DNA from: Takakia lepidozioides
Lineage: Eukaryota; Plantae; Bryophyta
Reading direction: 5' to 3'
DNA: 64,000 bases
NCBI GenBank assembly: GCA_030704615.1
Contig: CM060732.1
Location: 32,240,001 to 32,304,000, forward strand
Notes under the pieces: generated by a model
The model's input: only the letters and a program-made list of their open reading frames with translations
Databases searched by the model: none
What the model was told of the DNA's origin: nothing
Shown here: positions 1 through 64,000 of the stretch, piece after piece
How the letters are laid out: the number at the start of each line of letters is the position of its first letter
Position numbering within the stretch: the first letter of the stretch is position 1
Program-made: the position numbers and the translations under genes

Positions 1-410
1 TGATTCACCTCCTCCTTCACCTGTATGATCTGCCTCTCGCTGTTTACCTCTCCTGTGCAAGACATTCTGTAGGAGCGTCGAATTTGAGCTACCTGCAGTT
101 GAGCAGTGAGTTTCGCAATATTCAAGTGGTCAATTTTCAACGCAAACTACAGAGATGGAGCAGTGACACTTAGGACCCCGGACATTTACATTCATGTCCG
201 CAAAAACAACCCAACGGTCCATGAGCAACGACGATACCTGATTCACCTCCTCCTTCACCTGTATGATCTGTTTACCAGTGCTTGGCAAGACATGCTGTAG
301 GAGCGTCGAATCTGAGCTACCTGCAGTTGAGCATTGAGTGTCAAACACACTTTCAAAGGGTCAATTTTCAACGCAATCTACAGAGATGGAGCAGTGACAC
401 TTAGGGTACC
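1..410. repeat. Tandem duplication of a ~230-240 bp unit (about 1.7 copies visible, continues off the window start)
   Basis: TGATTCACCTCCTCCTTCACCTGTATGATCTG occurs at 1 and 239; TCAATTTTCAACGCAA.CTACAGAGATGGAGCAGTGACACTTAGG occurs at 130 and 361. Copy 1 carries a 10-nt insertion relative to copy 2. Confidence 0.85.
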
Positions 411-17474: not shown

Positions 17475-20398
17475 TTTTTTTTTTTTTTGGTGAAAATATG
17501 TTTACTTTATAGCAGGGGTGGGGATACATCCTAAGAAAAAATAACCTCTCCAACGGGTGCCATAGAGGCTGACCCAGGAAGACACTGCTTCGTCACCAAG
17601 AACAAAGAAAAAAGCGGGCCAACCGAAATTGGCCAAGGAGAGACCAAGCTAAACAACTTGGAATTAATTACCCTAGTAGCTATCACGCTTCCTTTTGTAT
17701 GTCTGAAAGGAGAGTTGTGTCCTAGATCGAGTTTTTCTAAGAGAGCGGCGGCGGCGTCTCCAGTTCACTTCAGATTCCTCGCCATCTGCCGGAGAAGGAG
17801 GAGCACTAAACGAGCTCCCAGTTGCAAGGGATGGAGCCGTTCCAGGAAATTCCCGAGGGTGAGTCTCTAGAGCAGATGATCTGTCTCTTGCCCCACAAGT
17901 TGTCAAACTGCGAGAAAAGTTGGTCCCTTCGCCTGTTGCTGCACCTGCAAACAACTTCACTCCACACCCGCCAAGCCTTACAGGCTTCAAACATTAAGTC
18001 TGAATGAATCAAGTACAGAATGACTCTGACACTACTTGGTCTCCCACCGAAGACTCTCTTACATCTTGCTCTCCAAACATGCCATAAGGTAAGGGCTCTG
18101 ATCGTAGACCAGACAGGGCATTGGGACCACAAGCCACCTTGAGAGAAATTAAGAAGCTGAATCGAAACACAAGGAAAAGTAAGAGTTTGCCACTGTCTGT
18201 AGAAAGCACCAACATGGTTCCAAACAATTGAAGCCAAGGGGCAGTTGACCAGACAATGTTCAATGGTCTCGGGAGCCTGCAGATTACAGTGGTCACATTC
18301 CACAGAACCATCCTGAAAAATGAACACGGACAGGAAGAATCTTGTTGACTAATTTCCACAAGAAGCCCGTAATCTTAGATGCTCTGTCTTTGCGCCATAC
18401 ATCTTTCCAGACCAAGGACCACTATGAAGGGCAATCAGGAATGTGGCCCCATTTGCCAGACCATTTGGAATCCATGGACACATTTGAGAAGGGAGAGATG
18501 GGTGATTGAAGGAACCAATGGAGAAAAGGGTTGGTATGCGAACCATTTTCCAGCTTTGGGTTAGTCTCCCCCGAGGCCATACACCAAACACGAATGGCAT
18601 AGCATTGATGTTCAGGCAGAACACAAAGGATGGGTGAGAAAAAAGGAGCCAGAGGGCTTAACCTGGAACTTCCATCCATTCAGCAAGGCGTCAGATCTAG
18701 CCATGGAAAAGAAGGTTGCCTTCAGCTGTGTCAAAGCCAACCCAGGTAGACAGCATTCTAAGATTTGCAGGATAGGAGGCAAGGGAAAAGTGACCAGGTC
18801 CCAGCCTGCATACGCTCTTCTGCTAGATAAGTTGGTTGTAGCTTCAATCATGGGTAACAATGCACCATTTTCCCAAACGTGGGAGAAATGGCTGATGTTG
18901 GCAGCCTCCCAAGGAGCCCAACGATTAGAGCATCTTACTAGAGCAGCAGCCTCTCTATTTGTGTTGCCACCCAAATAGATCTCCACGCCAACGATCCCAC
19001 CCCTGGCTTAGCGTTTAAAGAACCGCCATGAATCACCCACTTTAGAGTTTGAGGCCACAAGTTCGAGGAGGAGGGGGTGGCACGCAGAATATGTTGCCTG
19101 ACCAGGATGCTCCACGGAGCAGCAAGATTCCCAAAAATTCGTGGAACCCACTTAGCGAGTATAGCGCATATTTGTGTGTCCGGATCGAGGATCCCCAGGC
19201 CACCGTTTTTCTTTTTCTGCGAGATCTGGTCCCAGCTAACTAGAGCCCTACAGTTTGGCCTTGAAGGTGTGGCTCCCCAAATGAAATTGCGGATTAGAGC
19301 TTTCACCTTCTTGATAAAGACAGCTCCAGGGGACCATACGGAGGATATGAACCAACAAGAACCCAGAAAAATCTGATTGGCAATTAAGGCTCGACCAATG
19401 ATGGTGAGATGTAAGGAGCTCCAGTAGGCCAGATGCTTCTTAAGGCGCGCCAAGATGGAGTCACCTCTGTGGGAGTCATCTAGGCCATGTCCAATGAGGT
19501 GACCCAAAAGAACGTGGCACTCCCCATCATCCAGCCAACGGAGGTTGAAATCTTGACCCCACTGCTGACAGTGAGAAGAAGAGCTGCCAGTCCGAAGCTT
19601 CGAGAGCAGACCAACCGATTTCCTCCAATTCACACCAAGACCTGATGCTTCGTAGAAAATGGATAAGCAATCCAAGGCACATGAAACATTAGCCCTGGAG
19701 CCATTGTTGACCAGGAGAACAGTATCATCGGCATACATGGAGGATTTTATGCTGTAGGAGGGAGATGGGGGGCAGGGCACCTTGAGGCCTATGACGTCCT
19801 CACGACTATGCAGTAGATGTCCAAGCCCGTCTGCTGCTATGAGGAAAAGAAAAGGCAATAAAGAACATCCCTGCCTGACGGAGCGGAAGAGCCGAAAAGG
19901 GTTAGATAAGACTCCATTGAGCATCACCTTACTACTGGCAGATAACAGGAGGATCTTGTTCCAGTTAAGAAAATCCCTGAAATTTCGCATTTTTCAATAG
20001 CAGAGACGAGGAAGTCCCAGACTATATTGTCAAATGCCTTCTCAAAGTCGAGCATCAACAAGGCCAAGGGTTGATTCGAGTCATGCGCATGATGGAGGGC
20101 TTCGTTAACCAAGAGAACATTGTCAAGGATCATCCTCTTTTTCATAAATCCAGTTTGTTCCGGCCTAATCATCTTTTGAAGCAGGGGCTGAAGGCGAATC
20201 GCTAAGGCCTTGGCGATTATCTTGTAAACAGAATTCAATAGAGTTATAGGCCTATAGTTCCTAATATCGTCTCTGCTACCCTTCTTAAAGATGAGGGTGA
20301 TGACACCCAGTGAAAACTAGGATGGCATAATGCCCTTCGAGAGGACGTCTTGAGCCATGGCCAGAAAATCCCCGCCCATCTCAGGCCACATAGCCTGG
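17475..20398 (-). mobile_element. 5'-truncated, degenerate non-LTR retrotransposon (L1/Tx1-type ORF2: reverse transcriptase plus C-terminal zinc finger) with poly(A) tail
   Basis: NYRPITLLNSVYKIIAK, QTGFMKKRMILDN, LDFEKAFD, SVRQGCSL, MYADDT, CDHC...ETIEHCLVNCP. Frameshift near 19990, stops near 18938 and 20318. T14 run at 17475-17488 marks the 3' poly(A). No TSD recognised. Confidence 0.93.
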
Positions 20399-26206: not shown

Positions 26207-26985
26207 ACTCCGGCCGAAGCCGGCGTAACTAAGAGCCACTTTTGCCTTGCGGCTACTGCCCCTTTTCAGGGATTTTTGTCCATAGGAACTCTAAAAATTC
26301 ATGTCGCGTGTGCGGACATATAGCTAGCTCGACTGCGTACCCGTTTTCAAGAATATCGACCTGTTGTATATCTCAATGAGAGTGAGTTGAGTGAGTTGCA
26401 ATCATTTAACTCCTTCCCTTCCTTGGCACTAAATCTGCAAATGCTTAAGTCTAGGTCCATGCATCATAGTTTGGCAGAGAAGTTGTTACATACCGCAAAT
26501 AAATTGTTTCAATAATTATATAGTTGGCCATTTTGCTATCATTTCAAATAAGGGCTAACGATCTTAACCAGGCTTAAGTTAAAGGACGAGCTAACTTTTT
26601 TCACTTTTGCGAAAAAACAGTATATACCTTGACTAAACTAGCTACATCTTCCTATCGCCATCGATCCAATTGGATGAATCTTACAAGCTCATCCCTACTG
26701 ACGGCATGAACACCATAACAAAATGTGGGCAGGTTTGACTGTTGCAAAAGGAGATCATTACCGAAAACAAATGACAAAAATTGGAACCCAATGAAATGAC
26801 ATGACAAAAAAATGGTTTGACCATGGAAATTTTTCAATATCCATATTTCTCTTGGGTGAATGGCCTCGTCTAGGGCGTCGCTTGTCCATCCCATTTTATT
26901 AGAAAAATACAAAATAAAAAAGCGACCTAGAGGGAGTTCTGGGTGTTGTTGGGCTATGTTGGTGGTTTTGTTTTTTATTTCAAAG

Positions 26986-27086
26986 CTATCAAGACCGGCT
27001 ATAGGGATAAAGGGAGGCCGGTGAAACTGGAGTGCAACTACTTCAAAACCAAATTGACCAACCAAGAGGACGTCTACCACTACGAT
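26986..27086 (+). pseudogene. Isolated Argonaute N-domain exon fragment
   Basis: GYRDKGRPVKLECNYFKTKLTNQEDVYHYD|GT resembles the eukaryotic AGO N-terminal motif RPGxGxxGxxxxLxxNxF...xYHYDV. AG acceptor at 26984-26985 and GT after YHYD; no further AGO exons found nearby on this strand. Confidence 0.7.
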
Positions 27087-27177
27087 GTACAACAATCTGA
27101 AACATTATTCGTTGACATCCCAAGGAAGCGTGCCTATATATTTATATACGCCTCCCAAAGGGAGTGTAATTATGATG

Positions 27178-27425
27178 TCTCTTCACCACAAGGGCTACAA
27201 GTTGAAAGGTAGACACCTTCATGACACACCATACCGTGGTTTGAACCCACAACCACATCCAACGTGGTATGTGCCCATTACCAGTGGGCTACATGCTGGT
27301 ATCTCTTGACCCAAGGGGCTACAGCCTTTCTGGTGGACACCTTTGTGACACCAATTAGTGGATTGAACCCACAACCACTTTCAAGGTGGTAAATCCCATT
27401 ACAATTGGGCTACAACTTGGTGGTC
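27178..27425 (-). mobile_element. Two tandem ~122-bp units of a tRNA-like (A/B box) repeat, family B
   Basis: Minus strand TAGCCCACTGG ... GGTTGTGGGTTCAAACC and TAGCCCAATTG ... GGTTGTGGGTTCAATCC. A third copy lies at 39413-39545. Confidence 0.65.
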
Positions 27426-28257: not shown

Positions 28258-31200
28258 TCACATTGGGCATTGACAATCTCCCTTTCCTCTCTGCATCTTT
28301 TTGAGAGAGAGAGTTAGCACATAACAAGTAGCTATATAAACTATTATTGTTGTACAAGGAAGAACAAGCTCATGTGAAATGTGATGGGACATACAGCTTG
28401 TTGTTAGGCGCTGGTAAAATGCAGAGAGAACATTCTGCTGCTCAGATGGATCCCACCTGCCAGCTGCAGCAATATAGATGTTTGATAACAATTGTAAATT
28501 CAGTGGAGGAGGAGGTGTCAATACAAAGCGTGTGTCAGGCACATACCCCACCTCCATCTGCCCAGACAATCTTCTCAGGTCAGCATGGATTTCCTTAATT
28601 CTGGGATGCAACTTGTCATCTACAACAAAGGTGTGCACCCTGTTGCCAACCTCAATGCAGAAGCGACCTGGCTCCTTTCTAACCCATGTGACCTTCATCA
28701 TTTTTCTCACCTTTGCAGTATCATCCCACCTGCCAGCTGCAGCATAGATGTTTGATAGCAACACTTAAGTCGCGGCATCCTGTTCATCCCATTTGAGGAT
28801 AGATGTTGCCACACGTTCAACCATCTCCACATTGCCATGGATTCTGCAGGCACCAAGCAAGGCCTTCCACACCACAACATCTGGATTGATTGGCATTTTA
28901 TTAATCAGGTCCACTGCCTCATCCAGTTGTCCCACGTCCAAGAAGGTCCACCATGCAGCCAAAGTGCTTTACTGTCGGAGTAACACCATGATCTTGACTC
29001 AGGGAATCAAAGTAGCATCTTCCTTCATTCAGTAGGCCAGTGTGGCTGCATGCAGAGAGAACACATATAAAGGTGATACTGTCCGGCTTCAAGCCGTTCT
29101 TTTACATTCCTTCAAATAGTTGCAGGACCTCCCTATAACAACCATGCTGTGGGCATATCCTGCGATCATCGCATTCCACGACACCACATTTCGTTCAGTC
29201 ACATTGTCAAATACTCCTTTTGCATCCTCAATGCACCCCTTCCCCCATCATTTGCTCATAGGTCTCCAAGTCCTCCATCCCACGCCCCTGCTGTGCCTAT
29301 CTTGCAAGCATGGCGTTCCATGACACCACATCTCGCTCAGCCATATTGTTGAACACTCCCTCCGCATCCTCAATGCTCCCACATTTGGCATACATGTCCA
29401 CGAGGGTATTGTCCAGAATCACATCCAGCTTTGGCGATGCAACCATGCACGTCTTTGCCTTTTTCCAGGGCTGTCAGGCTTGCACATGCATTGCAAATGC
29501 AAACAAACGTTATGTGGCACATCAATTGCTCATAGGTCTCCAAAGCCTCCATCCCACGCCCCTGCTGTGCATATCCTGCAATCATCGCACTCCACGACAC
29601 AACATTTTGTTCAGGCCATACTGTCGAACACTCCCTTTGCATCCTCGATGCACTCACATTTGACATACATGTCCAGCAGGGCAGTGTTCAGGACATCTGG
29701 TACAAATCCTGCTTTGACGATGTCACCATGGACCTCTCTGCCAGGCTTGCACACGCATTGCAAATGCAAACAAACGTTATGCGGCACATCAATTGCTCAT
29801 AGGTCTCCAAAGCCTCCATCCCGCCCCTTGCTGTGCATATCCTGCAATCATCGCACTCCACGACACCACATCTCGTCCAGCCATACTGTCTAACACTCCC
29901 TCCACATCCTCGATGCACCCAGGTTTGGCATACATGTCCATGATCAGGGTATTGTTCAGAATCACATCTGGTACACTTCCAGCTTTGGAAATGCAACCAT
30001 GCACCTCTTTGCCCTTTTCCAGGGCTGCCAGGCTTGCACACGCACTGCAAACGCACACAAACGTGATGTGATCGGGCTTCACCCCTTCCCCCATCATTTG
30101 CTCATAGGTCTCCAAAGCCTCCATCCCACACCCCTGCTGGGCATACCCTGCAAGCATCGCACTCCACGACACCACATTTCGTTCAGCCATATTGTTGAAC
30201 ACTCCCTTTGCATCCTCAATGCTCCCACATTTGGCATACATGTCCACCAGGGCAGTGTTCCGGAAGACATTTGGTACAATTGCAGCGTTGAAGATGCCAC
30301 CATGGACCTCTTTGCCCTTTTCCAGGGCTGCCAGGCTCGCACAAGCATTGCAAACGCACACAAACGTGATGTGGTTGGGCTTCCCCCCTTCCCCCATCAT
30401 TTGCTCATAGGTCTCCAAAGTCTCCATCCTGCGCCCCTGCTGTGCATATCCTGCAAGCATGGTGTTCCATGACACCAGATCTCGTTCAAACATACTGTTG
30501 AACACTCCCTTCGCATCGTCGATGCTCCCCACATTTGGCATACATGTCCACCAGGGCATTGTTCAGAATGACATCGGGTACAATTCCAGATTTGACAATG
30601 TCACCATGGACCTCTTTGCCCTTTTCCAGAGCTGCCAGGCTTGCACACGCATTGCAAATGCACACAAACGTGATGTGGTTGGGCTTCACCCCTTCGCATA
30701 TCATTCGCTCATAGGTCTCCAAAGCCTCCATCCCGCGCCCTTGCTGTGCATATCCTGCAATCATCGCACTCCATGACACCACATCTCGTTCAGCCATAGT
30801 GTCGAACACTACCTTTGCATCCTCGATGCACCCACATTTTGCATACATGTCCACCGGGTATTGTTCAAAATGGCATTTGGTACAATTCCAGCTCTGACGA
30901 TGTCGCCATGGACCTCTTTGCCCTTTTCCAGAGCTGCCAGGGTTGTGTTCAGAATCACATCTGGTACACTTCCAGCTTTGGAAATGCAACCATGCACCTC
31001 TTTGCCCTTTTCAGGGCTGCCAGGCTTGCACACGCACTGCAAACGCACACAAACGTGATGTGGTCGGGCTTCACCCCTTCCCCCATCATTTGCTCATAGG
31101 TCTCCAAAGCCTCCATACCACGTCCCTGCTGTGCATACCCTGCAAGCATCGCGTTCCATGACACCACATCTCGTTCAGCCATAGTGTTGAAAAGTCCCTT

Positions 31201-31819
31201 TGCATCCTCAATGCACCCACATTTGGCATACGTGTCCACCAGGGCAGTGTTCAGAATGACATCTGGTACAATTCCAGCTTTGACGATATCACCATGGACC
31301 TCTTTCCCCTTTTCCAGGGCTCCCAGGCTTGCACACGCATTCCAAACACAAACAAACGTGATGTGGTTGGGCTTCACAGGATCAAAGATCGTTGAGGCAT
31401 TCTGTTGAACACTTGGTGAGCATCCATGATGCTCCCACACTTAACATACATGTTGACAAGGGTGTTGAGGAGAAAACATTTGGCGTGAATCCACTTTGGA
31501 TAATGCGAGTGTGCACCTGCTTTCCAGCTTCCAGGCCTTTCATCTTGATGCACTTATGCAAGAGACAGACATACATATCTGAATCTGCTGAAATGCCTCC
31601 TTGGTTTAAAGTCTGTAGAGCCTCTTTCAGTCTGCCTGCCTCGCAAAGCAGCTTCACATGCCCAGAAGTGCCAGAAGAGGCATTGTGGATTCCCTCTCTT
31701 GATCCTCTTCCAGAAGCTGTGGTCATGGTTGAGGTGCCTGATTTTATCAACTGTGCTGCTGCAGCTGCTCCTTTAGTTGACCATCTACCCATGCAAGTTT
31801 CTTGTACCAATTGATCCAT
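28258..31819 (-). pseudogene. PLS-class pentatricopeptide repeat gene with E-domain region; frameshifted, DYW domain absent
   Basis: Repeated P/L/S motifs (VVSWSAMIAGYAQQGRGMEALETYEQM, HITFVCVCNACASLAALEKGKEVH, NTALVDMYAKCGSIEDAKGVF). E region: VWKALLGACRIHGNVE, AT*VLLSNIYAAAGRW, KEPGRFCIEVGNRVHTF, GYVPDTRFVL. Many frameshifts; TAA at 28765-28767. Confidence 0.92.
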
Positions 31820-35270: not shown

Positions 35271-37424
35271 TTAGATCAACCTCAACAACAAGCCTTCCAT
35301 TGTTAATCCAGGCCCAAAACCCAGAGCGACCGTCCATGGGTGTACCTTGCCCGAGCTCTTGTCCTGCCGGAACTTATCCAGCACAAACATGATAGTGGGC
35401 GAGCTCATGTTTGCATACTGGTCAAGTATGTACCTGCAGCATTTTTACAACACACCATCCCAACAAGTTCTAACTCAGTGAAGCTGCTTTGAAATGAGAC
35501 CGTGTGGACTGCTGTGATCTATCGCAGTTTAAAGTACAACAAAGCCCTGTGCATTATAGGTCATCTTATAGGTGCGCCAATGTCGTGCAATAAGATGAAG
35601 GTGTGCACTCTACAGACTCGATTAATCTCCAAAGAATCTTTACCTCAGGCGAACTTGCAATCTTGTGTTCACTCTTAGTTTATGACGCACTTGAGCAGGT
35701 AGCATTGGTTGTTTGTGGGCACCTTGCCTATGCATAACCTAGGTGATCATGGTTCAAAGTGTCCACCAGCTTCTACCGAAGGTAGTAATTATTCTTTAGG
35801 ATGAAGAGACACTATAATTTAGGCTCCCTTGGGGGAGGAGTTCTCTTTCTTTCTTAGTTTATGCCCTTCATATGTTAGCTATCACCCTTGTGCCATAGCA
35901 TGACGTAGTACTACATTTAATGTTGCTAACGATAGGGAGGCCATGGATTTGAAGTTCAGAAGAGACCTGGATACTTGGAGCTGATGAGGTGCAAGACGAC
36001 AACCTTTCTCAACTGCATCCACAATCGCTTTACCTCCCGGATGTACTGCCCAGTTGATGGACTGGAAGTCGAGGTCGGTCCCCTTTAGAAGATCTGTCAC
36101 AAAATCCCCGGCTCGACTACCCACCAGCTGGGGAACATTTTTATTGAGGGTGGCATTTAGACCTGACTGAGTGACGCGGGCAGTGATACACTCATCTGTT
36201 TCCGGTATATATGAAGTACTAGATCGATGGATCTCATATATAGGAGTCTCAGACGTTGTGGGCTGTGCTCCAACCACAATCCCAGCAGCCCCGTCAGAAA
36301 ACAGTATTGCGACGACTATGTTGTTCATGTGGCTGATTGCGACGGGGTCCAGTGGTTGAGCCTGACACGAGTTTATCTCCACACAAACAACAAGGACGCG
36401 ATTGTTGGGGTCGCCAAGGGCAATCTCAGCTGCTGTGCGAATACCAATAAGGCCCGCATGGCAACCCATAAAGGAGACCCAGAAGTGCTTGACACTCTGT
36501 TGAAGGCCAAGGTATTTTATGAGGCGCATGTCGATAGCTGGGGATAGCATGCCAGTTGTCGAATACGTGATTAAATGAGTGATCTTTGACTTGTCCCCTC
36601 CCCAGTCATTGATTGCTCTTATTGCTGCCAGCTTCGCAATTTTCATGGCTTCAATCTCAAACCGAGCAAACCGATCGTCCAATGAGGGCGCCCCATAAGT
36701 GTGGAGGTTGGGGCTTGAAGTATACTTCTCACTTGAGACTGCCATATGCTTCTTTGTAATTCCAGAGCTTTTGCCTACAAACATACGAAAGCTCTGTTTA
36801 GCAATAACAAGTCTACTTGCCTGCATCACTCTATCTGTGCATAACATTGTAAGTACTAGTCTAACTGAGTTTCACAGGAAGTATGAAGCTTGTTCAATAA
36901 CCTGTTTGTTATATGATAAAAGTGCAAGAACACATGGACATGAAATTGCTTGCAAGTGAGCTAGCTACTGATCAAGGAATTTCATCTAGGGTAAAAAAAT
37001 TTGATCAATATATCTTGTTTGGCGAATCAGTAGCCTGAGCCGATGAACTAATTTTATTCATGCCCAATTTTGATAAAATAGTGCATCAATAATGAGCTTG
37101 CAATGTTTACTCACAGAGACGCTCAGTAAATTGTCGGACCTCAGGGAGGTTTTCATATTTGAAGCCCTTGATGATGTCAGTTGCAAACTCATTCATTTGA
37201 TTGATGGACTCTGGATTGGCTGTCCCAATGCCCAAGATGCTAGCCTGGGGGAAGGTCTGCTCTGTTGTTGCCACATTTGGGGTTCTACGTTCTGAAGCAG
37301 ACATACTCTCTGTGGTTCTACTGTCAGAGGGCTTCCAGTCGTTGTTTATGGGCACATCAGCAGCTAGTGGCGCATGTGATCCGTTTGTGGTTTCGAAACT
37401 TGAGCACCCATTGGAGATTGCCAT
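35271..37424 (-). CDS. ORS: Type III polyketide synthase, ORS-like (2'-oxoalkylresorcinol synthase type). Exons: 37424-37115, 36774-35967, 35433-35271
   Basis: [11 protein letters not shown]; catalytic triad in FMGCHAG, WAVHPGG and YANMSS; LFSDGAAG; GFGPGLTME. First intron splits the Cys codon as in plant CHS-family genes. Gln at the CHS Thr197-equivalent (EINSCQ) and Ala at the Phe265-equivalent (GLNAT). The type III PKS call is firm; the ORS orthology is inferred. Confidence 0.85.
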
Positions 37425-39287: not shown

Positions 39288-39412
39288 TCCGCATGCTCCT
39301 ATATTCGATCTTGAAGGATCTTTTTTCACTTTACACCAAGATTGACATCTTCGTCATTGAAAAATAAAATAAAAAATGACGCGTTGGCGAAGCAAGCGTA
39401 ACTTATGGTGTC

Positions 39413-39545
39413 GCTTGACCCCATAGGGCCATTGCCTTCCGGTGGGAAGGTGGACACCGTAATGACTTCCAACAAGGTGGATTGAACCCACAACCACTCG
39501 TGAGAGGGTATGCGCCCTTACCACTGGGCTACATGCTGGTTGTCT
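39413..39545 (-). mobile_element. Third copy of the tRNA-like repeat family B
   Basis: GTGGATTGAACCCACAACCAC...CCCTTACCACTGGGCTACATGCTGGT matches 27236-27300. Confidence 0.65.
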
Positions 39546-49600: not shown

Positions 49601-52600
49601 ATCCATGTATGAATTCCCGATTGGGCCTCCTGAACTCACAATATATGTGCAAACTAGTTCGTTTGTAGGGATTTCTGTCCGAGAGTTAATGGACGGGACT
49701 ACTGACTCTTGACCATGTAACTGTTGGTGGTTGTTTTTTCGTGTAGTTTTTGGCAACTGTCTCACACGAGATTCGAACACCAATGGTTGGTGTCTTGGGT
49801 AAGTTCTGCTACAATTATTTTTGTCAGTAACACATCAGTACGTAAATTGCGCTAAATGTTAGTTACATTTTCCAGTGAAGGAACTGTACTGCGAGAGGTC
49901 TGCTTTTGAGAATGATCTCTAAGCTATTTGAAAGCAAAGTTGCCGTGGCTGATCATAGGCTATATTAGTTGCAGGCAAATTGCTGCATCCTCCTGTAACA
50001 GGATTGAACACCCTTTCGATGTGGTCACGATCATACAGGTCTTCTACAACACAGTATTACTCCTAAATCTACATAGACCTAAATGAAGAACCTAAATCTG
50101 GAAAGGCCAAGCTTCTTTTGTTACAGGAATGCTTCAAATGCTGATGGATACTTCTCTGGATGCAACACAACAAGACTATGCCCGAACAGCCCAGGCCAGT
50201 GGCAAAGCTCTCATCACCCTTATCAATGAGCTCCTTGATCAGGCAAAGATTGAGTCAGGGCGGCTCGAACTTGAAGCTGTGCCGTTTGACCTGTGTGCCA
50301 TTCTTGATGATGTGCTCTCCCTTTTCAGTGGGAAATCTCGCGATGAGGGGATTGAGGTCTGCTCTCCACACCAATACAGTAAGAGAAGTAGATAAGGTCT
50401 TCTTCCAGTGTCAGTCTTGGGGCCCCTGCAACCTGAACAAAGTTACAAGTACAGTTTCCAAAACAAAGTGAAGACTAAAGCGATGGATTAGGAGAAAAGA
50501 GGGTGGGGGGATGCCAGATCACAATTTGATTGTACCTTCTCCTTCATTTTATTGGATTGTTGTCGAATGGACCTTGGGCTTAGCAGTCAAACAATTTCTA
50601 GTTAGGTCACTTCAGCTTTCAATCAATATTTGGTGGCTGGTGGGATATCTGAAGAGCATGGCTAAGATCTAAATTTACTGTCAGAGAAGGAAGTCCCTAA
50701 TGAGGGGTTTTGTGTGCTTGTCTTTTGCACACATGTAACTTGGACAAGAGAAGCTGGCTGTATTTGTCTCGGAAAGGGTTCCCAGCATTCTCATTGGAGA
50801 CCCAGGGAGATTTCGGCAAATCATTATCAACCTTGTCGGGAACTCCATTAAAGTATATTCTCTTCACCTTTCTGTATTACAGTGGGCTTTCTTTCCTGCC
50901 CGCGCTGTTTCTGATGACTAATCAACCTCGGTTGAATGTTCCATTATGCAGTTTACAGAGAAGGGGCACATATTTGTTTGTGTACATTTGGCGGAGGACA
51001 TGAATATGGTGCTGGATGGTGATAGCGTCGAAGATTACTACGAGGAGGAGGTTGAGAGTCCTGGGGGACCTGACATGAGAAATCAGTTCAATACCTTGAG
51101 TGGCTTCGAAACTGCTGATGGAAGGAATAGTTGGGAGACCTTTGGGCGCCTGTTGGCACATGAAAGCTCTTTCCACCCAGAGTCTGGGCATGATACCTGG
51201 GATTGTTTGGAGGAGAATGATCTTGTTAACCTGGTGGTTTGTGTGGAGGACACAGGAGTTGGAATTCCGTACCACGTCCAGGAGCGCATATTTACACCCT
51301 TTGTGCAGGTAAGGCTGCATCAAAAGAACCTTTATGGGTGTGTGGACTTGCTGGGCTCAACAGTGAGCTGGGGAGTGCTAGATAAAATTGAGCGGACACT
51401 ACCATGCGTCACCAAGCAGTTTACATAATTTTGATCAGATTATGCAAAGCTGGGTTAATTTAGCAGTTTTTGTAATGATGCTGGCTACTGTCTACTCATG
51501 GCTGCAGAGGAAGAGAGGAGTGGGGTGGGTGTTCAGCAATGCTGCAGTCTTCACTCAAAATCAAGTACATTAAATGCAAGGTCTTGATGAGAGAACTTTT
51601 ACTATTTTGAGTGCAGGCTGACAGCTCAACATCAAGAACTCATGGAGGTACAGGAATCGGACTCAGCATTAGCCGTTGCTTGGTGGCGTTAATGGAGGGT
51701 GAGATGGGGTTTGTGAGCCACCCAGGCAAGGGGTCAACGTTCACCTTCACTGCGATTCTTCAAAGTGTGCCAGAAAGTGTGCCGGTTCAGGTCCTCAGGG
51801 AATCTAACTGTGTGTTGCAAACGCCCCCATTACCAGCATGTTTCCAAGGAATGCGAACGCTGGTTGTGGATGGGAGACCAGTCCGGTGCGAGGTGACCCG
51901 ACATCACTTGCGAAGGCTTGGTGTGCTGGTAACCTCTTTTACTTTCAAAGTCAGATTCTTCTTTCTCCTCCCCCTTTCTTTAAACTACACTCTCGAGTCT
52001 CCAAGCACAAGGCTACAGCAAACGTAATCAATTGAGTTCATCTGTCAAAATTGGATTTCAAACCAGGAACAAGAAGTGGTGCTGTGTGGGCATTTACTCA
52101 CTTGTGCTGGGGATGAGTACCAGTCAAGCTGGATGTATCATACCGGATGGTGAGAGTTATTGATGTCCCACAAGTTTCTTTTCCGCTCTGTGGTAAGCTG
52201 TATGCAGATGCTTGGATTGCTTAGTCATCACGATGCTTTTTTATCTGAATTAATCTTGCATAGTTGTTACTGTTAGGTGTGGTGGGGTCATTGATTTGTC
52301 GGCTTACTTCCCTAGACCCATGGAGGTTGATGCACTGAGGTTGATGCACTGTAAAGTCAATGTAATTAGCTTGGGTTGCATGACTCAATGCTCGATGGGG
52401 GGTTTTGGATCAAAACCTTGATTTCCAAGTTTTATCCAAAGCTATCTGGCTTAGAAACAAACTCCGTGTTTGTACTGTGACTGATGGTCAGGTTGAAGTC
52501 GCCCATAAGGTGGGTTCCGCTCTTGCACTGCTGGCAGCCACGACTGATGGTGGTGCTAATGGCTTTCACAGGTATCACTAAAGGTTCTGTGTCTTGTGGG

Positions 52601-53749
52601 TTCTTTTCTAGGTGTGGAAGGGGTTAGGTGCATAGTCGATCGAGAAGAAGGTATTTCCTGTTTTCTTTCTGTATCTTTGAAGTTCTACCTACTCTTCCTA
52701 CTGACTCTGACTCAAAAGTGTTCGTTCACCCTTGTCAGCTCGACGGCAGGGGGTATAGATTTGATTCTTGTGGACAAGGATGCGTGGGGACCCGGAACAG
52801 GCATAAACTTCCCGCGTCTTCTGGCCCAAAGTATAGGCCTGAGCTCAGACTACAGCAGCTCCAGAGCAAGATACAGCAGACCCAGATTAACCCCCTGCAG
52901 GCTGCCGAGTGGGTTCCCATTCCGTAATCTACCGAAGATGATGTTGGTGGCAACATCAGTTACTCCGGGGGACCAGGAAATGGCTATAGCGAATGGATTT
53001 CTGGATACCATAATTATAAAACCCCTTAGGGCAAGTATGGTGGCAGCCTGCCTCCAGCAGGCACTTGGGTATGGAGACAGAAGAGAGCAAGGGCGGGAGC
53101 TTCCCATGGAGGGCGGGTCTCTACAGAACCTTCTCTCTGGGAAAAGAATCTTAGTGGTTGATGACAACAGGGTTAATCGAAGGGTGGCTGCTGCGGCCCT
53201 TAACAAATATGGTGCCAAAGTGGAGTGTGTAGACAGTGGGAGAGAGGCAATTACAAGGCTTCGCCCCCCTCACAATTTTGATGCGTGTTTCATGGATGTT
53301 CAGATGCCTGAAATGGATGGGTAAGCTATGGGTCAACCCAAGTCTTTGGGACACTCATTGCCTCAGACACAAGTAGAGATGTACAGTCTAAGGTGAGGCC
53401 CTAGACAACTTGAACTTGCCAAGTAACTGTTTGAAGGAGAAGAAATCTTCCAACTGTGAAATTAAATGTGATGGAGAGATATCTTCACCCTAACCAAAGT
53501 TTTGTGCTAGGCAGGTTTGAAGCAACAAGACTAATACGCCAAGCTGAACTTCAGAGCGTGGAATGGATGTCTTCTGGTGTACTAAGCCATGGGCTCCCTG
53601 TGCGCATACCAATCCTGGCAATGACAGCTGATGTAATACAAGCAACAGCGGCTGAGTGTTTGCGGTGTGGGATGAATGGCTATGTTGCCAAGCCTTTTGA
53701 TGAGCAACAACTGTACAATGCAGTCTGCCACTTTTTTGAGACAGATTAG
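46640..53749 (+). CDS. CHK: CHASE-domain hybrid histidine kinase (cytokinin receptor, AHK2/3/4-CHK family). Exons: 46640-47071, 47400-47492, 47860-48096, 48337-48506, 48749-48964, 49227-49416, 49747-49798, 50127-50356, 50754-50852, 50952-51308, 51617-51928, 52492-52571, 52750-53320, 53515-53749
   Basis: CHASE: [67 protein letters not shown]-box [13 protein letters not shown]; N-box [10 protein letters not shown]; G1 EDTGVGIP; G2 [10 protein letters not shown]; receiver [11 protein letters not shown]. The exact start codon is uncertain. Confidence 0.95.
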
Positions 53750-58700: not shown

Positions 58701-60119
58701 GCTTGAGCAGTTACTCACCACTGGACCTTTTCTCTGGCACTATGGAGGGCATCCACAAGGCCCTTCTCGCTCTACTTGAAACTCCCCAAAACAACCTTCG
58801 TATCTTTGCCAACGGAATCGAAGTCTTTCCAGGTGCGGAAGGCAATGCTGGGTCCCCTGAGAGCTGCAAAGGCACCTTAGAGGATAGTTTGGAGGGATTT
58901 TCATTTGTTCCAAAGGGAGAGCGACTCCTAGCCTTCCGAAGACTTGTAGCTCACATATTGCACCAGAGCAAGATACTTGGTAGACTGCTTGCTGTACAAA
59001 AGTTGGATGCGTACGACATTGAGGGTGCCATCCTGGCCTACAAGAATTTGTTGGAACAGGATCCAGGTCAGTATCCCTGTCAGCATTCGTGTCCAACCCT
59101 GCAGATCTGGACAGCTACTTCTTAGTTGGTGATGAGTATTAGGTGGAAGTACTTCCGTGTTGTGCCAGAGGAAGACTCTGTGAATCCCACAACTAAGGAA
59201 CAAAGCCTGGAGGCTGAAAGGCGGCTGAAAGAGCAGTTGATCGTCTGTAGTATTTACTCTGGGCATTTCCAGCATGTCCCCTTCATCTCAAGCCTCAGAT
59301 AAACTAGTATTCATAGCTGAGCACTCATTATCTGTTGGAAGTTGGGTTTCAGGTGCAGCCGAAGCTCAACATGACAACACCACTCGGAAAGAAAACATGA
59401 GTGTTGAAAGCCTAGCTCTTGAGAATGAGGAAGAGCAATACCAGAGGGACCAAGATTGGATTCGGTCTCTGTCCTGGAATGATAGTCGCCGAATAGTGCG
59501 AAACTACCTCATTGCAGCAACTGCCAAAGACTGTGGTTTGATGCTCACATTGCGACCTTTCCAAAATGGCTCTGTCTCCGCTTTCCCTGTCCCATCAACT
59601 TCTGTGGCATGCTGTCCGACAACCAAGCAGCAATATTCGTACAAGGTATGGAGAGGGATGGGTTGAAATTAATTATCCAGCAGGTTACGGAAGTTTGATC
59701 TATTCAATAAAACAAGATGACGAAGAGTAACAGGGGAGCGTAGCAGTGGTTGACGAAGAGTAACAGGGGAGAGTAGCAGTGTTTGGAAGTGCAATCTGAC
59801 ATGCCAATTAAGAAAAATGATGATGAAATGCAGGGGTGGATGAGGGGAGAGTTAGGGGAGGTGAGCATCATGGGGCGTATTCCAATAATACAACTCCATT
59901 AGTGGGACTACTTCAAAGCCTTACTACTGGCAAATATGATGCTAGACACTCACCAGAGAGTATCCGAAGACTGGGTTGGTTCTCTGCTGACTTACGCTGT
60001 TCTTTCTGCAGATCTCACTCTTGGATCTGGATGTGAAGCGGCTGCACAAGATGCCCTTTTACTACAGGCTGGACCAGGAAATTGTGCAGCATTATAAAGC
60101 CTCATTGGTCCAAGAGTGA
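55790..60119 (+). CDS. IPK1: Inositol-pentakisphosphate 2-kinase. Exons: 55790-55963, 56102-56329, 56835-56988, 57372-57415, 58077-58187, 58694-59066, 59353-59645, 60012-60119
   Basis: WQYRGEGAANIVLAY, IGRVLRIRK, IEIKPKWG, SRFAMHQ, YSPLDLFSG, PQNNLRIF, YLIAATAKDCGLM, LDLDVKRLHKMPFYYRLDQEIV. GT-AG introns with consistent phases. Confidence 0.95.
59718..59783. repeat. 33-bp direct tandem duplication in IPK1 intron 7
   Basis: TGACGAAGAGTAACAGGGGAG(C/A)GTAGCAGTG occurs at 59718 and 59751. Confidence 0.85.
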
Positions 60120-60632
60120 ACTTTCTATGATAGCTGAAAAAATAAAGGTTGTCCTTAGCAATCAATTGAGGTTTGATTGCAAGGCATGGGTTGTAAATAT
60201 GTTCATCTAGAATGGCTGCATTTGCCGTGACAATTAAATGCTTCCTTGTGGAAGATTGTCAGTTAGTTTATCGGTTTATTGGATTTGTTTCCAACAAATG
60301 TGGTATGGTCACATTACATTGAACTGTTTCATTTTCATTTTGTCTGCATGAGTTCTTTGGTTCTCGGCGGTGGCTTTGATTCTGCATGATGACTTCAGAC
60401 AGGAATAGTTTCTTGAATACGTTGGTATTATGAACGGTGTGTTCTATCCCCTATCTCTCAAAATAGGCTGGCTTGTGTCTGTGGGCATTGATTCTGACCA
60501 AGGAACTGCTTTTAAGATGCTATTGAAATCACCTCAAGTCAGATGAAAAGTAACTACAGATCAACAAGCACAGTAGCACATTCCATGCAGAGCCGCACTT
60601 TGTAACCCAAAGTCGAGAGGAGCTCATCCTGC

Positions 60633-63600
60633 CTAGCAAAAGAACATGCTATGCTCACGACTCATTCTTGTTGGGCGAATTGCTTGCAGGTCGCCTCTTT
60701 GTAAATTTGGGTGTTCGTCGTCCGAGAGTTCCTTGCTGCGTTGGTCTTCTTCATACTCCAACAGTTTCTGGAAACGTTTGGCCGCACGGTTGGCATACGC
60801 TATCGGCGCAGCTGTGGCACACGACAAAACACTCTATCAATCACATTGCAAGCTTGCTGTTGATTTGAGAGAATCCAAGACCCTCACGGAGGTCTGAAGT
60901 GTGAACTCATGAGGTACACTTGCACATATTCTCTTCGTCAAATGGTATTCGCGAGTGCATGTGGGGTAGATGGAAAGGGATTTCCACATGTTTCTGAATC
61001 TGGTCTATGAGAAGAGTTAGCGGGAAGATCTACTCACCTACACGTATGGCAGTAGTGGAGGGGGAATATCTGCATTCACACATATAAATTCCTTAGAAAG
61101 ATACGTGCATATGAGAGCGGATACAAATTGTGTCCAAGAGCCAACTACATGATAGAAAACAACAGGCCTGCAATCAAATACTGTGGGTGTGAGCTCAACG
61201 ATTTCTGATTTCTGATATGCTGTAGGAATGCTCTTCACAATTGATTATACATACGTGTAACAAAGATTATATGTCAATTGCTGCAGATCATCGGGCGTAA
61301 ACTCGTTCTCGTTGCAGAGTATATGGTAGTGAGTTGGCCGCGTTGTCCCCTGCATTCAAGTCACTCGGGAAGTTTGTTAATTGATAGTCAGTTTACGATT
61401 ATAACTTGTCACTTTCTTTCTTTGGGATTCGTGGGAGGCACACTGTCTACTCCCGAAATAGTCAATCACGAGAATCAGAAATTCTTAGCAGCATATCTGC
61501 ATGAGGCGTTGACACTGAGTCCCTTCAACAATAATTGTTTCTCTAAGTTCTGTTGTCCAGTAAGCTCTTTTCAGAGCTTTCCCCGGACGTTATGAAGTAT
61601 CGAATATCTGATTTCTTTCAAAGATTTCAAAGTCTAGAAACTCTTGAGCTGACACAAAGTTTCAGGGAAATGATTTTTCTGAGGAACCACCCACCCTTTA
61701 GACGATTAATGACATGGCAGATAAACACGTTTGGCAGGCATGACTACAACGAGAAACAAGAAAGATGGTGAAGAAGTCACACACAATGAGGTTGCTTTGA
61801 CTGCAGAGGAAGAAGTCGTAGGTGTGGGGGTCACATACATCCGTATCCACGATTGTACCTTCACATAGGTCAGTTGAGCGCATGGTCTCAAATCAAACGT
61901 TTAAGAGACATGGTCGACGTTGCCTACATCCTCATTGCAAAAATGAAAAATCCTGCTCAAGCACGACTGATTGCTGTACAAAAACTATGACATGGTAGTG
62001 TTCAGTTTAAATAAATCTCCAGCAGCTCTACATTTGAGGGGACCGTGGTTTCTCTCTTTAAAACGGAAGGCTGCAGCATAGAGGCCATAGAGGTTATGTG
62101 AACTTCAGAAGGGAGCATTACCTGGACTGATATTCTGATTACTGCTGTCTGTAAAGAAGCGAGTGTTATGTGGCTTTTGTGCCACTATTAATGTTATAGC
62201 AGGGCGGTAACCAGACTGCAGACTCTCGCATGCCTGCATTTGTGCATGCCAGTTTTGATCCATAAGAGTTAAAAAAGTCCTGATGAATTTGGAAACATCC
62301 TCTGTCAAGCACTAAGTGATAGAGATGCTTGCCTTGACAAATGCAGTCACCTCCAAGTCGAGAATTTGCTGAAATTGTGAGTTGCTCACCCCACCCCTGC
62401 ACAGCAAACCAAGGTGTTAGGTCGAGAACCTGAAAACGATTGGCTTCAGGGAACTCAAGACTTGCAGGATATGTACATGTTCAGTGTGAGCACATTGGAG
62501 AAGGCATTGAGCAGTATATTTTCAGCAAATGCAATATTGGGAAAGCCTTCAGGAGCTAAAGGGCATTGCCAGCTTTCAAGATCAGGAGATGTCATCGTTG
62601 CATTTGTTAACCCAGCTACTCCATGGAACAAGAGAAGGTGTCCATGGCCACATTATCAAATAGGGGTTGTGCAGTAAAATGTGTGTGTGCAGAACACCAG
62701 GCTCCACATTATGCTTTCTAAGCTTACTGCAATGTTGGTGTAGTTGATATATGCATGCATGCACAAGTAAATTCTGAAGTACGGATTGAGATGATAGCAG
62801 GATGCTCAAATGATTCGAGCAAGTAAGCCAGAAGTCTGAGCTCTACATACCTGTATATTATGATCTGTTGTGGTAACGCGCTCTTGTGCGGATATTGGCA
62901 CGTGTTTTTGAATTCAGTGAGCAAATGCCTAGATCTCACATATACCCACATACTGACAACTGTAAGAAAACACACTCGTCTAAAAGATGCCCGGCCCTGA
63001 TCAATAACAACAACCACACATGACTACAAGTTGATTACAAGTACATTAGCATCGAGAAACCATCACGACGGGCCATGTTCAAATTGAAGCTCTTTTAGTG
63101 AAAAACTCCTTGAAGCCTCGAACACAACGTTACATTTTTAGCTTGCTCAAATTGCTAACTGGTGTTGGTCAAACACGAATAACTCAAGAATGATGAATCG
63201 AACTTGTTTGAGCGCAGTTTACAATCTTAGAACTTTTAATGATTTGTGAAGTTTCAGTTTCTGACCGGACCGTGCCAGCTGCTGCTTGTCCTTCAACGTC
63301 TTCGCACAGGCCTCGGACCAGCGGTTGTCGAGCTGTCTGTGTCCTCACTTGAACTGCAGACAGGCCAGCAAAGTGGGGCCAATTCTTTGTCGCCACCACC
63401 TGTACATACCCAACAATGCTGGCACAAATTTCTCAACTGCTCATAGTTTGCACCGACATAAGGTTGTAGATCTAAGATCATGCATAAAGTTTACCAATTT
63501 GAAGATGGCACTTGATTCAGCCTAAAGTGAGCGCGGTTTATCCACAGTGTGATGGAGACCACATCATGCATGGCTGCAGTCAATGAAGAGGCACTGCTTG

Positions 63601-64000
63601 TACAACTATAGGACTGTTCAGTTGATCAGTCATGAAGTTGTGTGCATTTCAAACACTCGCCATTACGGTGCGGGCCCATATTTTGAGTTTAGAGCACAGC
63701 ATATAACTTGCAAGCACTACTATGAGTGTGCATGCAAGCGTTAATTTGCAAGGATACGCTACTGCCATCACTGTTCACATTAAACCAGATACAAATTAGT
63801 CTGCAAGACACAATTTTGTGTTTACCGATCGATACATTGATCAAAGTCATCCATAGCTTACGGTTTAGAATGTTCCTTACAGCTGCAGCGGAAGGTGAGT
63901 CTGCATACGGACTGGGCTCCGAGACTTTCATTCCAAAGATGATGGTGGGGCCCCGGTCTCCCAAGAAGCGTGTCAGCTGGTGAGAGCTCAGTAAGGAGTT
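60633..64000 (-). CDS. AGO: Argonaute, AGO4/6-like, PIWI-domain part only (5' end outside the window), slicer residues substituted. Exons: >64000-63881, 63399-63266, 62928-62851, 62396-62333 (GC donor), 62233-62122, 61858-61785, 61349-61255, 61069-61038, 60811-60633
   Basis: Spliced product: NSLL...[14 protein letters not shown]...[13 protein letters not shown]...[11 protein letters not shown].../HLLTEF...[24 protein letters not shown].../[15 protein letters not shown]...[32 protein letters not shown]...[25 protein letters not shown]...MFFC*. All exon phases close without a stop. Confidence 0.92.

What the first reader, a model, noticed from the sequence alone, without database searches (positions are those of the whole stretch)
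60633..64000. Frame-intact AGO4/6-type Argonaute with all four slicer residues replaced (DEDH to K-P-G-N)
Seen: nine exons splice in frame to the canonical MFFC* end, so this part is not a decayed pseudogene. Yet GMDVSH reads GMKVSE, the glutamate-finger position (xxEMI) reads RQPLV, YRDGV reads YRGGV, and YAHLAA reads YANRAA. Established: DEDH/D is the RNase H-like tetrad of slicing Argonautes, and [23 protein letters not shown] and a short STTAI exon are AGO4/6/9-clade traits. Inference: a lineage-specific non-slicing Argonaute kept under selection, possibly a small-RNA-binding scaffold, chromatin guide or competitor of active AGO4 in RdDM. Loss of all four positions with radical changes, including Asp to Lys, is unusual for plant AGOs. 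This is the best candidate for an undescribed system in the window.
Basis: partly seen in the sequence, partly recalled or inferred. Interest (0 to 1): 0.82.

Follow-up and report, generated by a model that had tools for sequence, protein, structure and literature searches.

The report
Slicer-dead AGO4-type Argonaute in a moss
The window ends in the last nine exons of a moss AGO4-family Argonaute gene whose reading frame and splice layout are intact but whose four RNA-cutting residues are all replaced, which fits a small-RNA-binding protein kept without cutting activity, though expression and the front half of the gene could not be checked.

Summary
On the minus strand, nine exons (60633-64000) read in frame for 295 codons to MFFC-stop. 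All eight intron positions and phases match the annotated AGO4-like genes of Sphagnum and Ceratodon.

Alignment to 35 land-plant Argonautes, numbered on human AGO2, gives D597K, E637P, D669G and H807N. No acidic residue lies at any tetrad position. Trees put the sequence inside the moss AGO4-like clade (support 0.998 and 99.6) on a branch about 1 substitution per site long. The best identity is 54%.

Random decay is unlikely. Of 58 columns invariant in the other Argonautes, the window keeps 50. The eight lost include all four tetrad residues (P = 1.6e-4). The excess non-synonymous change, if neutral, would leave an open frame in about 0.6% of simulations.

Some guide-contact residues and three splice signals are weakened. 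A lone Argonaute N-domain exon lies at 27 kb on the other strand.

Verdict: probably a maintained non-slicing AGO4-clade gene, a new variant of a known kind. A decaying or split copy remains a real alternative.

The parts
63881..64000 (-). Exon A, cut by the window end about 3-4 codons after its expected acceptor. It encodes ..[29 protein letters not shown]. The K codon 63928-63926 stands at the first catalytic Asp (hAGO2 D597) and the E codon 63919-63917 at the invariant His of DVSH.
   Evidence: matches Sphagnum exon aa 608-650
63266..63399 (-). Exon [30 protein letters not shown]. The P codon 63324-63322 stands at the glutamate finger (hAGO2 E637). The donor is a weak GTCAGA.
62851..62928 (-). 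Exon [26 protein letters not shown] plus the first two bases of the split Arg codon.
62333..62396 (-). Exon D, (R)[21 protein letters not shown]. The G codon 62395-62393 stands at the second catalytic Asp (hAGO2 D669), and N replaces the invariant Glu of GVSE.
62331..62332 (-). GC donor of intron 4 (AAG|GCAAGC). The homologous introns of Sphagnum and Ceratodon start with GT.
62122..62233 (-). Exon [38 protein letters not shown](G). It is 5-6 codons shorter than in other mosses, an in-frame difference.
   Evidence: (Piwi 35.8 bits)
61785..61858 (-). Exon F, (G)[24 protein letters not shown]. The invariant His of CHP is Asp here, and HAG/QAG reads QSN. The acceptor is AAG.
61255..61349 (-). Exon [32 protein letters not shown](T), the best conserved exon.
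   Evidence: (Piwi 49.7 bits)
61038..61069 (-). Exon H, a 10-codon micro-exon, [10 protein letters not shown](A). P stands where 97% of the references have Arg (hAGO2 R792), and R where 97% have Ser (S798).
   Evidence: (10-codon exon also in Sphagnum and Ceratodon)
60633..60811 (-). Exon I with the stop codon, [14 protein letters not shown]...EHSMFFC*. The N codon 60791-60789 stands at the catalytic His (hAGO2 H807). The Arg aligned to hAGO2 R812 and the C-terminal MFFC are kept.
26987..27092 (+). Lone Argonaute N-domain exon, AIKTGYRDKGRPVKLECNYFKTKLTNQEDVYHYD. It is 46-51% identical to exon 2 of moss AGO4-like genes and has a GT donor at the same position as Sphagnum. No further Argonaute exons follow on this strand. 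It is either a relic of a duplicate or the detached 5' part of the same gene.

Best explanation
This is the PIWI-domain end (the last nine exons) of a bona fide moss Argonaute gene of the AGO4/6/9 side of the family. The lineage lost slicer chemistry completely (D-E-D-H became K-P-G-N, with second-shell changes). The fold, the exon-intron layout and the reading frame stayed under purifying selection. Shown here: the exon model, the tetrad replacements, the clade, the non-random pattern of losses and the open frame. Inferred: the protein still loads a small RNA, because the Arg aligned to the PIWI 5'-phosphate contact R812, the GTTRP motif and the C-terminal MFFC are kept. It would then act without cutting, by binding nascent or target transcripts and recruiting partners, or by competing with slicing AGO4-type paralogues for siRNAs or GW-hook partners. 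Passenger strands would have to leave without cleavage, as in non-slicing animal Argonautes.
For: Exon model and frame: 295 codons, one terminal stop, canonical splice dinucleotides. Vertical descent: 8 of 8 intron positions and phases are shared with annotated Sphagnum jensenii and Ceratodon purpureus AGO4-like genes, including the 10-codon micro-exon. Clade: it groups with moss AGO4-like proteins with support 0.998 (FastTree) and 99.6 SH-aLRT (IQ-TREE); the best hit is Sphagnum at 54%. Tetrad: aligned opposite invariant D, E, D and H. Non-random loss: 50 of 58 columns invariant in 35 plant AGOs are kept, the 8 lost include all 4 tetrad residues (hypergeometric P = 1.6e-4), and 50 of 54 non-tetrad invariants are kept. 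Constraint: the dN branch is 0.30 against 0.12 and 0.14 for Sphagnum and Ceratodon. If that excess were neutral, about 170 substitutions would be needed, and only 0.6% of simulations keep the frame free of stops. All length differences from relatives are in frame. Context: a genic neighbourhood, convergent with an IPK1 gene, with no repeats or TE insertions in 60-64 kb. From the codon table (not computed here), the K and P replacements each need at least two nucleotide changes.
Against: The first two-thirds or so of the gene (N, PAZ, MID) lie outside the window and may be broken or absent. No orthologue carrying K-P-G-N was found. Four non-catalytic invariants are also lost (H28E, G32Y, E116N, H179D), as are near-invariant positions aligned to hAGO2 guide-backbone contacts (R792 to P, S798 to R). 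Retention of invariants is 86% against 97-100% in leave-one-out controls. Three of sixteen splice signals are weak: a GC donor, a GTCAGA donor and an AAG acceptor. With only the 8 invariant losses to explain (about 60 neutral substitutions), an open frame still occurs in 13% of simulations. Earlier scan notes report other scattered AGO4-like fragments in this genome, and one orphan N-domain exon lies in this window.
Confidence: 0.55

Rival explanations
1. It is a pseudogene or decaying duplicate. An AGO4-like copy lost function, possibly after a period as a non-slicer, and the visible 3' part merely has not yet collected a stop or frameshift. The unseen 5' part may be truncated.
For: The branch is long, about 0.9-1.0 substitutions per site. 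Conserved non-catalytic residues are lost. Splice signals are weakened. Earlier notes list several AGO4-like fragments elsewhere in this genome, and one fragment lies at 27 kb in this window. An open frame occurs in 13% of neutral simulations that lose 8 of 58 invariants. No expression data and no orthologue were obtained.
Against: Random decay does not explain why all four tetrad residues are among only eight lost invariants (P = 1.6e-4). It does not explain why invariant columns changed about 6 times more slowly than the branch average. It also does not fit the purely in-frame length changes or the 0.6% chance of an open frame if the excess dN were neutral. This still allows a very recent death of a long-standing non-slicer.
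Confidence: 0.28
2. It is one gene split by an inversion. The lone N-domain exon at 26987-27092 (+) and the PIWI exons at 60.6-64 kb (-) are the two ends of a single former plus-strand gene. An inversion of roughly 27.2 kb to about 70 kb would have broken it in the intron after the N-domain exon, so the PIWI part is now promoterless.
For: The geometry fits. The orphan exon is on the opposite strand and keeps its donor GT at the Sphagnum position, and no further AGO exons follow it. Its divergence from moss AGO4-like proteins (46-51%) is like that of the PIWI part (50-54%). A small repeat sits right after it at 27163-27425, with a copy at 39.4 kb.
Against: The case is purely geometric. The second breakpoint would lie outside the window. 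A 34-50 residue match cannot show that both pieces come from one gene. A relic of a separate duplicate explains it equally well.
Confidence: 0.1
3. It is a mis-modelled gene. The true splice pattern would restore acidic residues, or the apparent exons are chance open frames.
For: One GC donor and two weak splice signals.
Against: Every exon boundary and phase coincides with annotated Sphagnum and Ceratodon genes. The tetrad codons lie inside exons, away from junctions. No Asp or Glu occupies any tetrad position, and the nearest are a Glu three residues after the first Asp position and Glu-Asp (CED) seven to eight residues after the glutamate-finger position.
Confidence: 0.03

Closest known systems
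Moss AGO4-like Argonautes (Sphagnum jensenii P0270; Ceratodon purpureus M758_8G124800 = P0276 and M758_7G167600 = P0333)
   Same: Same clade in both trees. Identical positions and phases for the last eight introns, including the 10-codon micro-exon. Shared moss motifs: [22 protein letters not shown] and EHSMFFC.
   Different: Those proteins keep D-E-D-H and 98-100% of the family invariants. The window sequence is only 50-54% identical to them, has K-P-G-N, a branch 2-5 times longer, longer introns (99-481 nt against 87-415 nt) and a GC donor in intron 4.
Arabidopsis AGO4/AGO6/AGO9 (RNA-directed DNA methylation effectors)
   Same: Same side of the plant Argonaute tree. Shared traits are GM.VS.G-type and GT(T/S)RPTHY motifs, STTAI and the MFFC end.
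   Different: From established knowledge, AGO4 is a slicer with the DDH triad, and slicing contributes to passenger-strand removal and some RdDM. A survey of 196 green plants reports DDH, rarely DDD, for this clade. Here none of the four residues remains.
Naturally non-slicing Argonautes: human AGO1 and AGO4, C. elegans WAGOs, and a monocot AGO18 subclade without a conserved triad
   Same: They have a full Argonaute fold with an incomplete or absent catalytic set and act by binding and recruiting rather than cutting. This is established knowledge; the AGO18 statement comes from bioRxiv 10.1101/2022.01.18.476847.
   Different: They belong to different clades and lineages. Human AGO1 and AGO4 keep two or three of the four residues, whereas here all four are gone and the first Asp is replaced by Lys. 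No biochemical data exist for this gene.
Arabidopsis AGO8 (an AGO4-clade member suggested to be a pseudogene)
   Same: It is a divergent duplicate within the AGO4 clade whose functionality is doubtful (mentioned).
   Different: The part of this gene that can be seen has no frame disruption, and its substitutions are concentrated on the catalytic site rather than spread at random.

Membership tests
Eukaryotic Argonaute, PIWI domain (Pfam PF02171) | Significant match to the Piwi profile | tested here: met
   Searched exon by exon. Exon E scores 35.8 bits and exon G 49.7 bits, both above the 28.9-bit cutoff. Exons D and F match below the cutoff at consecutive profile positions 155-274.
Eukaryotic Argonaute, PIWI domain (Pfam PF02171) | Full N-PAZ-MID-PIWI architecture | not testable with these tools
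   The gene runs off the window at 64000. No tool reached beyond it: the look-up of encoding contigs found no record for window ORFs.
Plant AGO4/6/9 clade | Phylogenetic placement with AGO4-type proteins rather than AGO1/5/10 or AGO2/7 | tested here: met
   It groups with moss AGO4-like proteins with support 0.998 and 99.6. The AGO1/5/7 outgroup sits across a branch of about 0.8. The position inside the moss clade is unresolved (63.6-0.86).
Plant AGO4/6/9 clade | Gene structure shared with clade members | tested here: met
   8 of 8 intron positions and phases match Sphagnum P0270, and the corresponding ones match Ceratodon P0276.
Slicer-competent Argonaute | RNase H-like tetrad Asp-Glu-Asp-His/Asp | tested here: not met
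   K, P, G and N stand at the four positions. These columns are invariant in all 35 reference sequences.
Functional (expressed, selected) gene | Transcription and correct splicing | not testable with these tools
Functional (expressed, selected) gene | Purifying selection on the coding sequence | tested here: inconclusive
   Indirect tests favour constraint. Pairwise dS to the nearest relatives is saturated, at 2.3 or undefined, and no close orthologue was available.

The most novel reading that the evidence does not exclude
Mosses, or one moss lineage, keep a dedicated catalytically dead AGO4-clade Argonaute. It would bind siRNAs or GW-hook partners without cutting. It could act as a slicing-independent RdDM effector or as a built-in competitor that tunes the active AGO4 paralogues. 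That would make it the first natural complete-tetrad-loss member described in the plant AGO4/6/9 clade.
Probability: 0.45. Interest if true: 0.6.

Novelty: new variant of a known kind. Interest (0 to 1): 0.47.

Why it matters
In Arabidopsis it is still debated how far AGO4 slicing is needed for siRNA loading, nuclear entry and RNA-directed DNA methylation. A naturally slicer-dead AGO4-clade protein that evolution has kept would be a ready-made separation-of-function allele in a bryophyte. It would show what this clade can do by binding alone. It would also extend the known pattern of non-slicing Argonaute paralogues (animals, nematode WAGOs, a grass AGO18 subclade) to the plant transcriptional-silencing branch. 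If it turns out to be a dying copy, it is an ordinary pseudogene with an unusual substitution pattern.

Tried and rejected
1. Orthologue hunts all failed.
- An exhaustive representative search with exon G returned only AGOs 52-77% identical over that exon, with no self or near-self hit.
- A word-index search with exon I found no candidate.
- Metagenome scans with exon I and exon E gave nothing, or one unrelated 47% hit, L001.
- Searches seeded with a fern protein and with an unplaced bryophyte-like AGO4-like protein listed only the best 120 proteins. They gave the moss references but not this gene.

2. I tried to align single exons to a scaffold protein to build a mixed profile. MAFFT misplaced the fragments, so I abandoned that route.

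3. Exact-sequence look-ups of window ORFs, meant to reach DNA beyond 64000, found nothing on record.

5. The treekit careful and quick builds gave no answer. I replaced them with direct FastTree and IQ-TREE runs.

6. Pairwise dN/dS against Sphagnum and Ceratodon has saturated dS, so it says nothing about recent selection.

7. Transposon capture of the PIWI part: I found no repeats, TIRs or TE ORFs in 60-64 kb, so this is not supported for the visible part.

8. The findings index by sequence was blank.

9. The joined (spliced) protein was never sent to any search or folding tool, because it has no reference. It existed only inside scripts for alignment, trees and simulations. As a result no Pfam, PDB, homologue or structure-prediction run on the joined model was made.
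Full report
**What is there**

The finding lies on the minus strand. The three minus-strand frames of 60600-64000 contain a chain of short open stretches carrying Argonaute PIWI motifs. Reading them codon by codon gives nine exons with consistent phases:
- A 64000(cut)-63881
- B 63399-63266
- C 62928-62851
- D 62396-62333
- E 62233-62122
- F 61858-61785
- G 61349-61255
- H 61069-61038
- I 60811-60633

Spliced in a script, they total 888 nt, or 295 codons, with a single TAG after MFFC. Seven donors are GT and one is GC (AAG|GCAAGC at 62332). All acceptors are AG. Searched exon by exon, Pfam Piwi matches exons D to G at consecutive profile positions. Exons E and G pass the family cutoff on their own.

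The joined model has no reference, so I never sent it to a search or folding tool.

**Is the exon model right?**

I fetched the genomic loci of two annotated moss AGO4-like genes: Ceratodon purpureus M758_8G124800 (P0276, L003) and a Sphagnum jensenii gene (P0270, L004). I then mapped their exons. The last nine Sphagnum exons encode 43, 44, 26, 22, 43, 25, 33, 10 and 58 residues. The window's exons encode 40+ (cut), 44, 25-26, 21-22, 37-38, 24-25, 31-32, 10 and 58.

The junction sequences fall at the same codon positions and phases, including the 10-codon micro-exon. Ceratodon lacks only the first of these introns, so its exons A and B form one 81-residue exon. The only dinucleotide difference is intron 4, which has GT in both relatives and GC here. 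Two other signals are weak: donor GTCAGA in intron 2 and acceptor AAG in intron 5. The model is therefore homology-backed, and mis-modelling is very unlikely.

**The tetrad**

tblastn with fern, lycophyte, liverwort and moss AGO4-like proteins and a 36-sequence MAFFT alignment agree on these placements:
- GMKVSE opposite GMDVSH
- ARQPLVRGL opposite (S/R)K.EMI.GL
- [10 protein letters not shown] opposite YRDGVSESQF
- YANRAA opposite YAH(L/I/V)(A/V)A

The Sphagnum protein aligned to human AGO2 and Arabidopsis AGO10 structures, which gives the numbering D597K, E637P, D669G and H807N. No Asp or Glu occupies any of the four positions. A one-residue shift at the glutamate finger would give Gln, not an acid.

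**Which Argonaute?**

The best matches of the model are moss proteins: Sphagnum at 54% and the two Ceratodon paralogues at 50%. FastTree and IQ-TREE both place it with the moss AGO4-like clade, with support 0.998 and 99.6. This is on the AGO4 side of the tree, away from the AGO1/5/7 outgroup.

Inside that clade its position is unresolved: it is sister to Sphagnum plus Bryopsida with support of only 63.6-0.86. Its terminal branch is 0.9-1.0 substitutions per site, against about 0.2-0.6 for the others. It could be a deep paralogue, a fast-evolving recent duplicate pulled to the base, or the orthologue in an early-branching moss. An earlier scan note calls the genome a moss, and the tree agrees.

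**Decayed copy or maintained protein?**

Three indirect tests were possible.

1. Pattern of losses. 58 alignment columns are invariant in all 35 reference AGOs. The window keeps 50 and loses D25K, H28E, G32Y, E66P, D112G, E116N, H179D and H244N (window-model numbering). In leave-one-out controls, every functional AGO keeps 97-100%. All four tetrad residues are among the eight losses. If losses fell at random on invariant columns, the chance of that is 1.6e-4. Two more losses, the His of DVSH and the Glu of GVSE, sit three and four residues from a catalytic Asp.

2. Rate heterogeneity. Invariant columns changed at about 0.15 per site (0.08 without the tetrad). The branch average is about 0.9-1.0, so constraint was acting over most of the branch.

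3. Open frame. NG86 dN to Sphagnum and Ceratodon is 0.42 and 0.44, against 0.26 between those two. That gives a window branch of 0.30 against 0.12 and 0.14. dS is saturated. Taking a conservative dS of about 1.2 per branch, explaining the excess by neutral decay needs about 170 substitutions in 885 nt. Only 0.6% of simulations then stay free of stops. That figure leaves out indels, and every length difference from relatives is in frame.

The weaker form of the null is not excluded by the frame alone. A neutral period just long enough to lose 8 of 58 invariants (about 60 substitutions) leaves an open frame 13% of the time. That form is contradicted by test 1.

**What argues the other way**

- Near-invariant residues outside the tetrad are also changed. 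The Arg aligned to hAGO2 R792 is Pro and the Ser aligned to S798 is Arg. From my own knowledge of hAGO2 structures, these residues contact the guide backbone. The His of CHP is Asp, and HAG/QAG reads QSN.
- Three splice signals are weakened.
- The N, PAZ and MID exons lie beyond 64000 and could not be reached.
- No orthologue with K-P-G-N turned up.
- Earlier first-stage notes report several scattered AGO4-like fragments in this genome. I did not check them.

**A second Argonaute piece in the window**

At 26987-27092 on the plus strand lies a single exon-like piece, AIKTGYRDKGRPVKLECNYFKTKLTNQEDVYHYD. It is 46-51% identical to exon 2 of the moss AGO4-like genes (E = 7e-9 to Sphagnum). A pyrimidine-rich AG acceptor precedes it, and a GT donor follows exactly where Sphagnum has one. 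No other Argonaute exon follows on that strand. A small repeat sits just downstream at 27163-27425, with a copy at 39.4 kb.

This piece may be a relic of another duplicate. The geometry also fits one former plus-strand gene broken by an inversion of about 43 kb. In that case the PIWI part would be a detached remnant. Sequence beyond the window would settle this.

**Context**

The neighbourhood is genic rather than a TE island:
- an F-box/kelch gene at 11.8-12.9 kb
- LINE reverse-transcriptase remnants at 17.8-20 kb
- a PPR-E/E+ gene at 28.2-31.4 kb
- a type III polyketide synthase at 35.9-36.8 kb
- a CRE1-like histidine kinase at about 51-53 kb
- an IPK1 gene ending about 500 bp from the Argonaute stop, in convergent orientation

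No repeat touches 60-64 kb.

**Comparison with what is known**

A survey of 196 green plants, including five mosses, found DDH (rarely DDD) throughout the AGO4/6 clade. Among land-plant AGOs it noted an unconserved triad only in a monocot AGO18 subclade (bioRxiv 10.1101/2022.01.18.476847). I found no report of a moss AGO lacking the tetrad. Non-slicing Argonautes as such are well known (human AGO1 and AGO4, nematode WAGOs). This is therefore a new variant of a known kind, not a new kind.

**Verdict**

- Maintained non-slicing AGO4-clade gene: about 0.55. It most likely works by small-RNA-guided binding without cleavage, or by competition with slicing paralogues.
- Decaying or truncated copy: about 0.28.
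- Inversion-split gene: about 0.10.
- Mis-modelled gene: about 0.03.

Interest is moderate. It would rise if upstream exons, transcripts and orthologues confirm maintenance.

Noticed in passing
window 26987-27092 (+), open frame 26931-27209: A lone Argonaute N-domain exon, 46-51% identical to exon 2 of moss AGO4-like genes, with splice-like boundaries kept. No further AGO exons follow on that strand. A short repeat follows it at 27163-27425 (two tandem copies), with another copy at 39395-39544.
   Followed up: partly
window 28258-31440 (-): A PPR gene of the E/E+ class, split over four overlapping ORFs in different frames. It has internal repeats at offsets of about 274-302 nt (roughly one PLS triplet), 75-92% identical at the DNA level. 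This is either a recent internal expansion or a frameshifted pseudogene.
   Followed up: no
window 17806-19990 (-): LINE-type reverse-transcriptase remnants (weak RVT_1 and zf-RVT matches).
   Followed up: no
window 35882-36847 (-): A 321-codon ORF with chalcone/stilbene synthase N- and C-terminal domains, probably the large second exon of a type III polyketide synthase gene.
   Followed up: no
window 50946-53324 (+): Exons of a CRE1/AHK4-like histidine kinase (HATPase_c, the CRE1 first receiver domain and a response-regulator receiver).
   Followed up: no
window 58703-60120 (+): An inositol-pentakisphosphate 2-kinase (IPK1) gene. Its 3' end faces the Argonaute stop codon across about 500 bp (convergent pair).
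   Followed up: no
P0165 (locus L002, a Logan transcript contig): A full-length 905-residue AGO4-like transcript with an intact DEDH tetrad. It is about equally distant (49-56% identity) from liverwort, lycophyte and fern AGO4-like proteins, and the searches run found no close relative. It may come from a poorly sampled bryophyte lineage.
   Followed up: partly
window 1-405 (+): A direct repeat about 175 nt long at the window start, 84% identical between copies (1-174 and 239-405).
   Followed up: no
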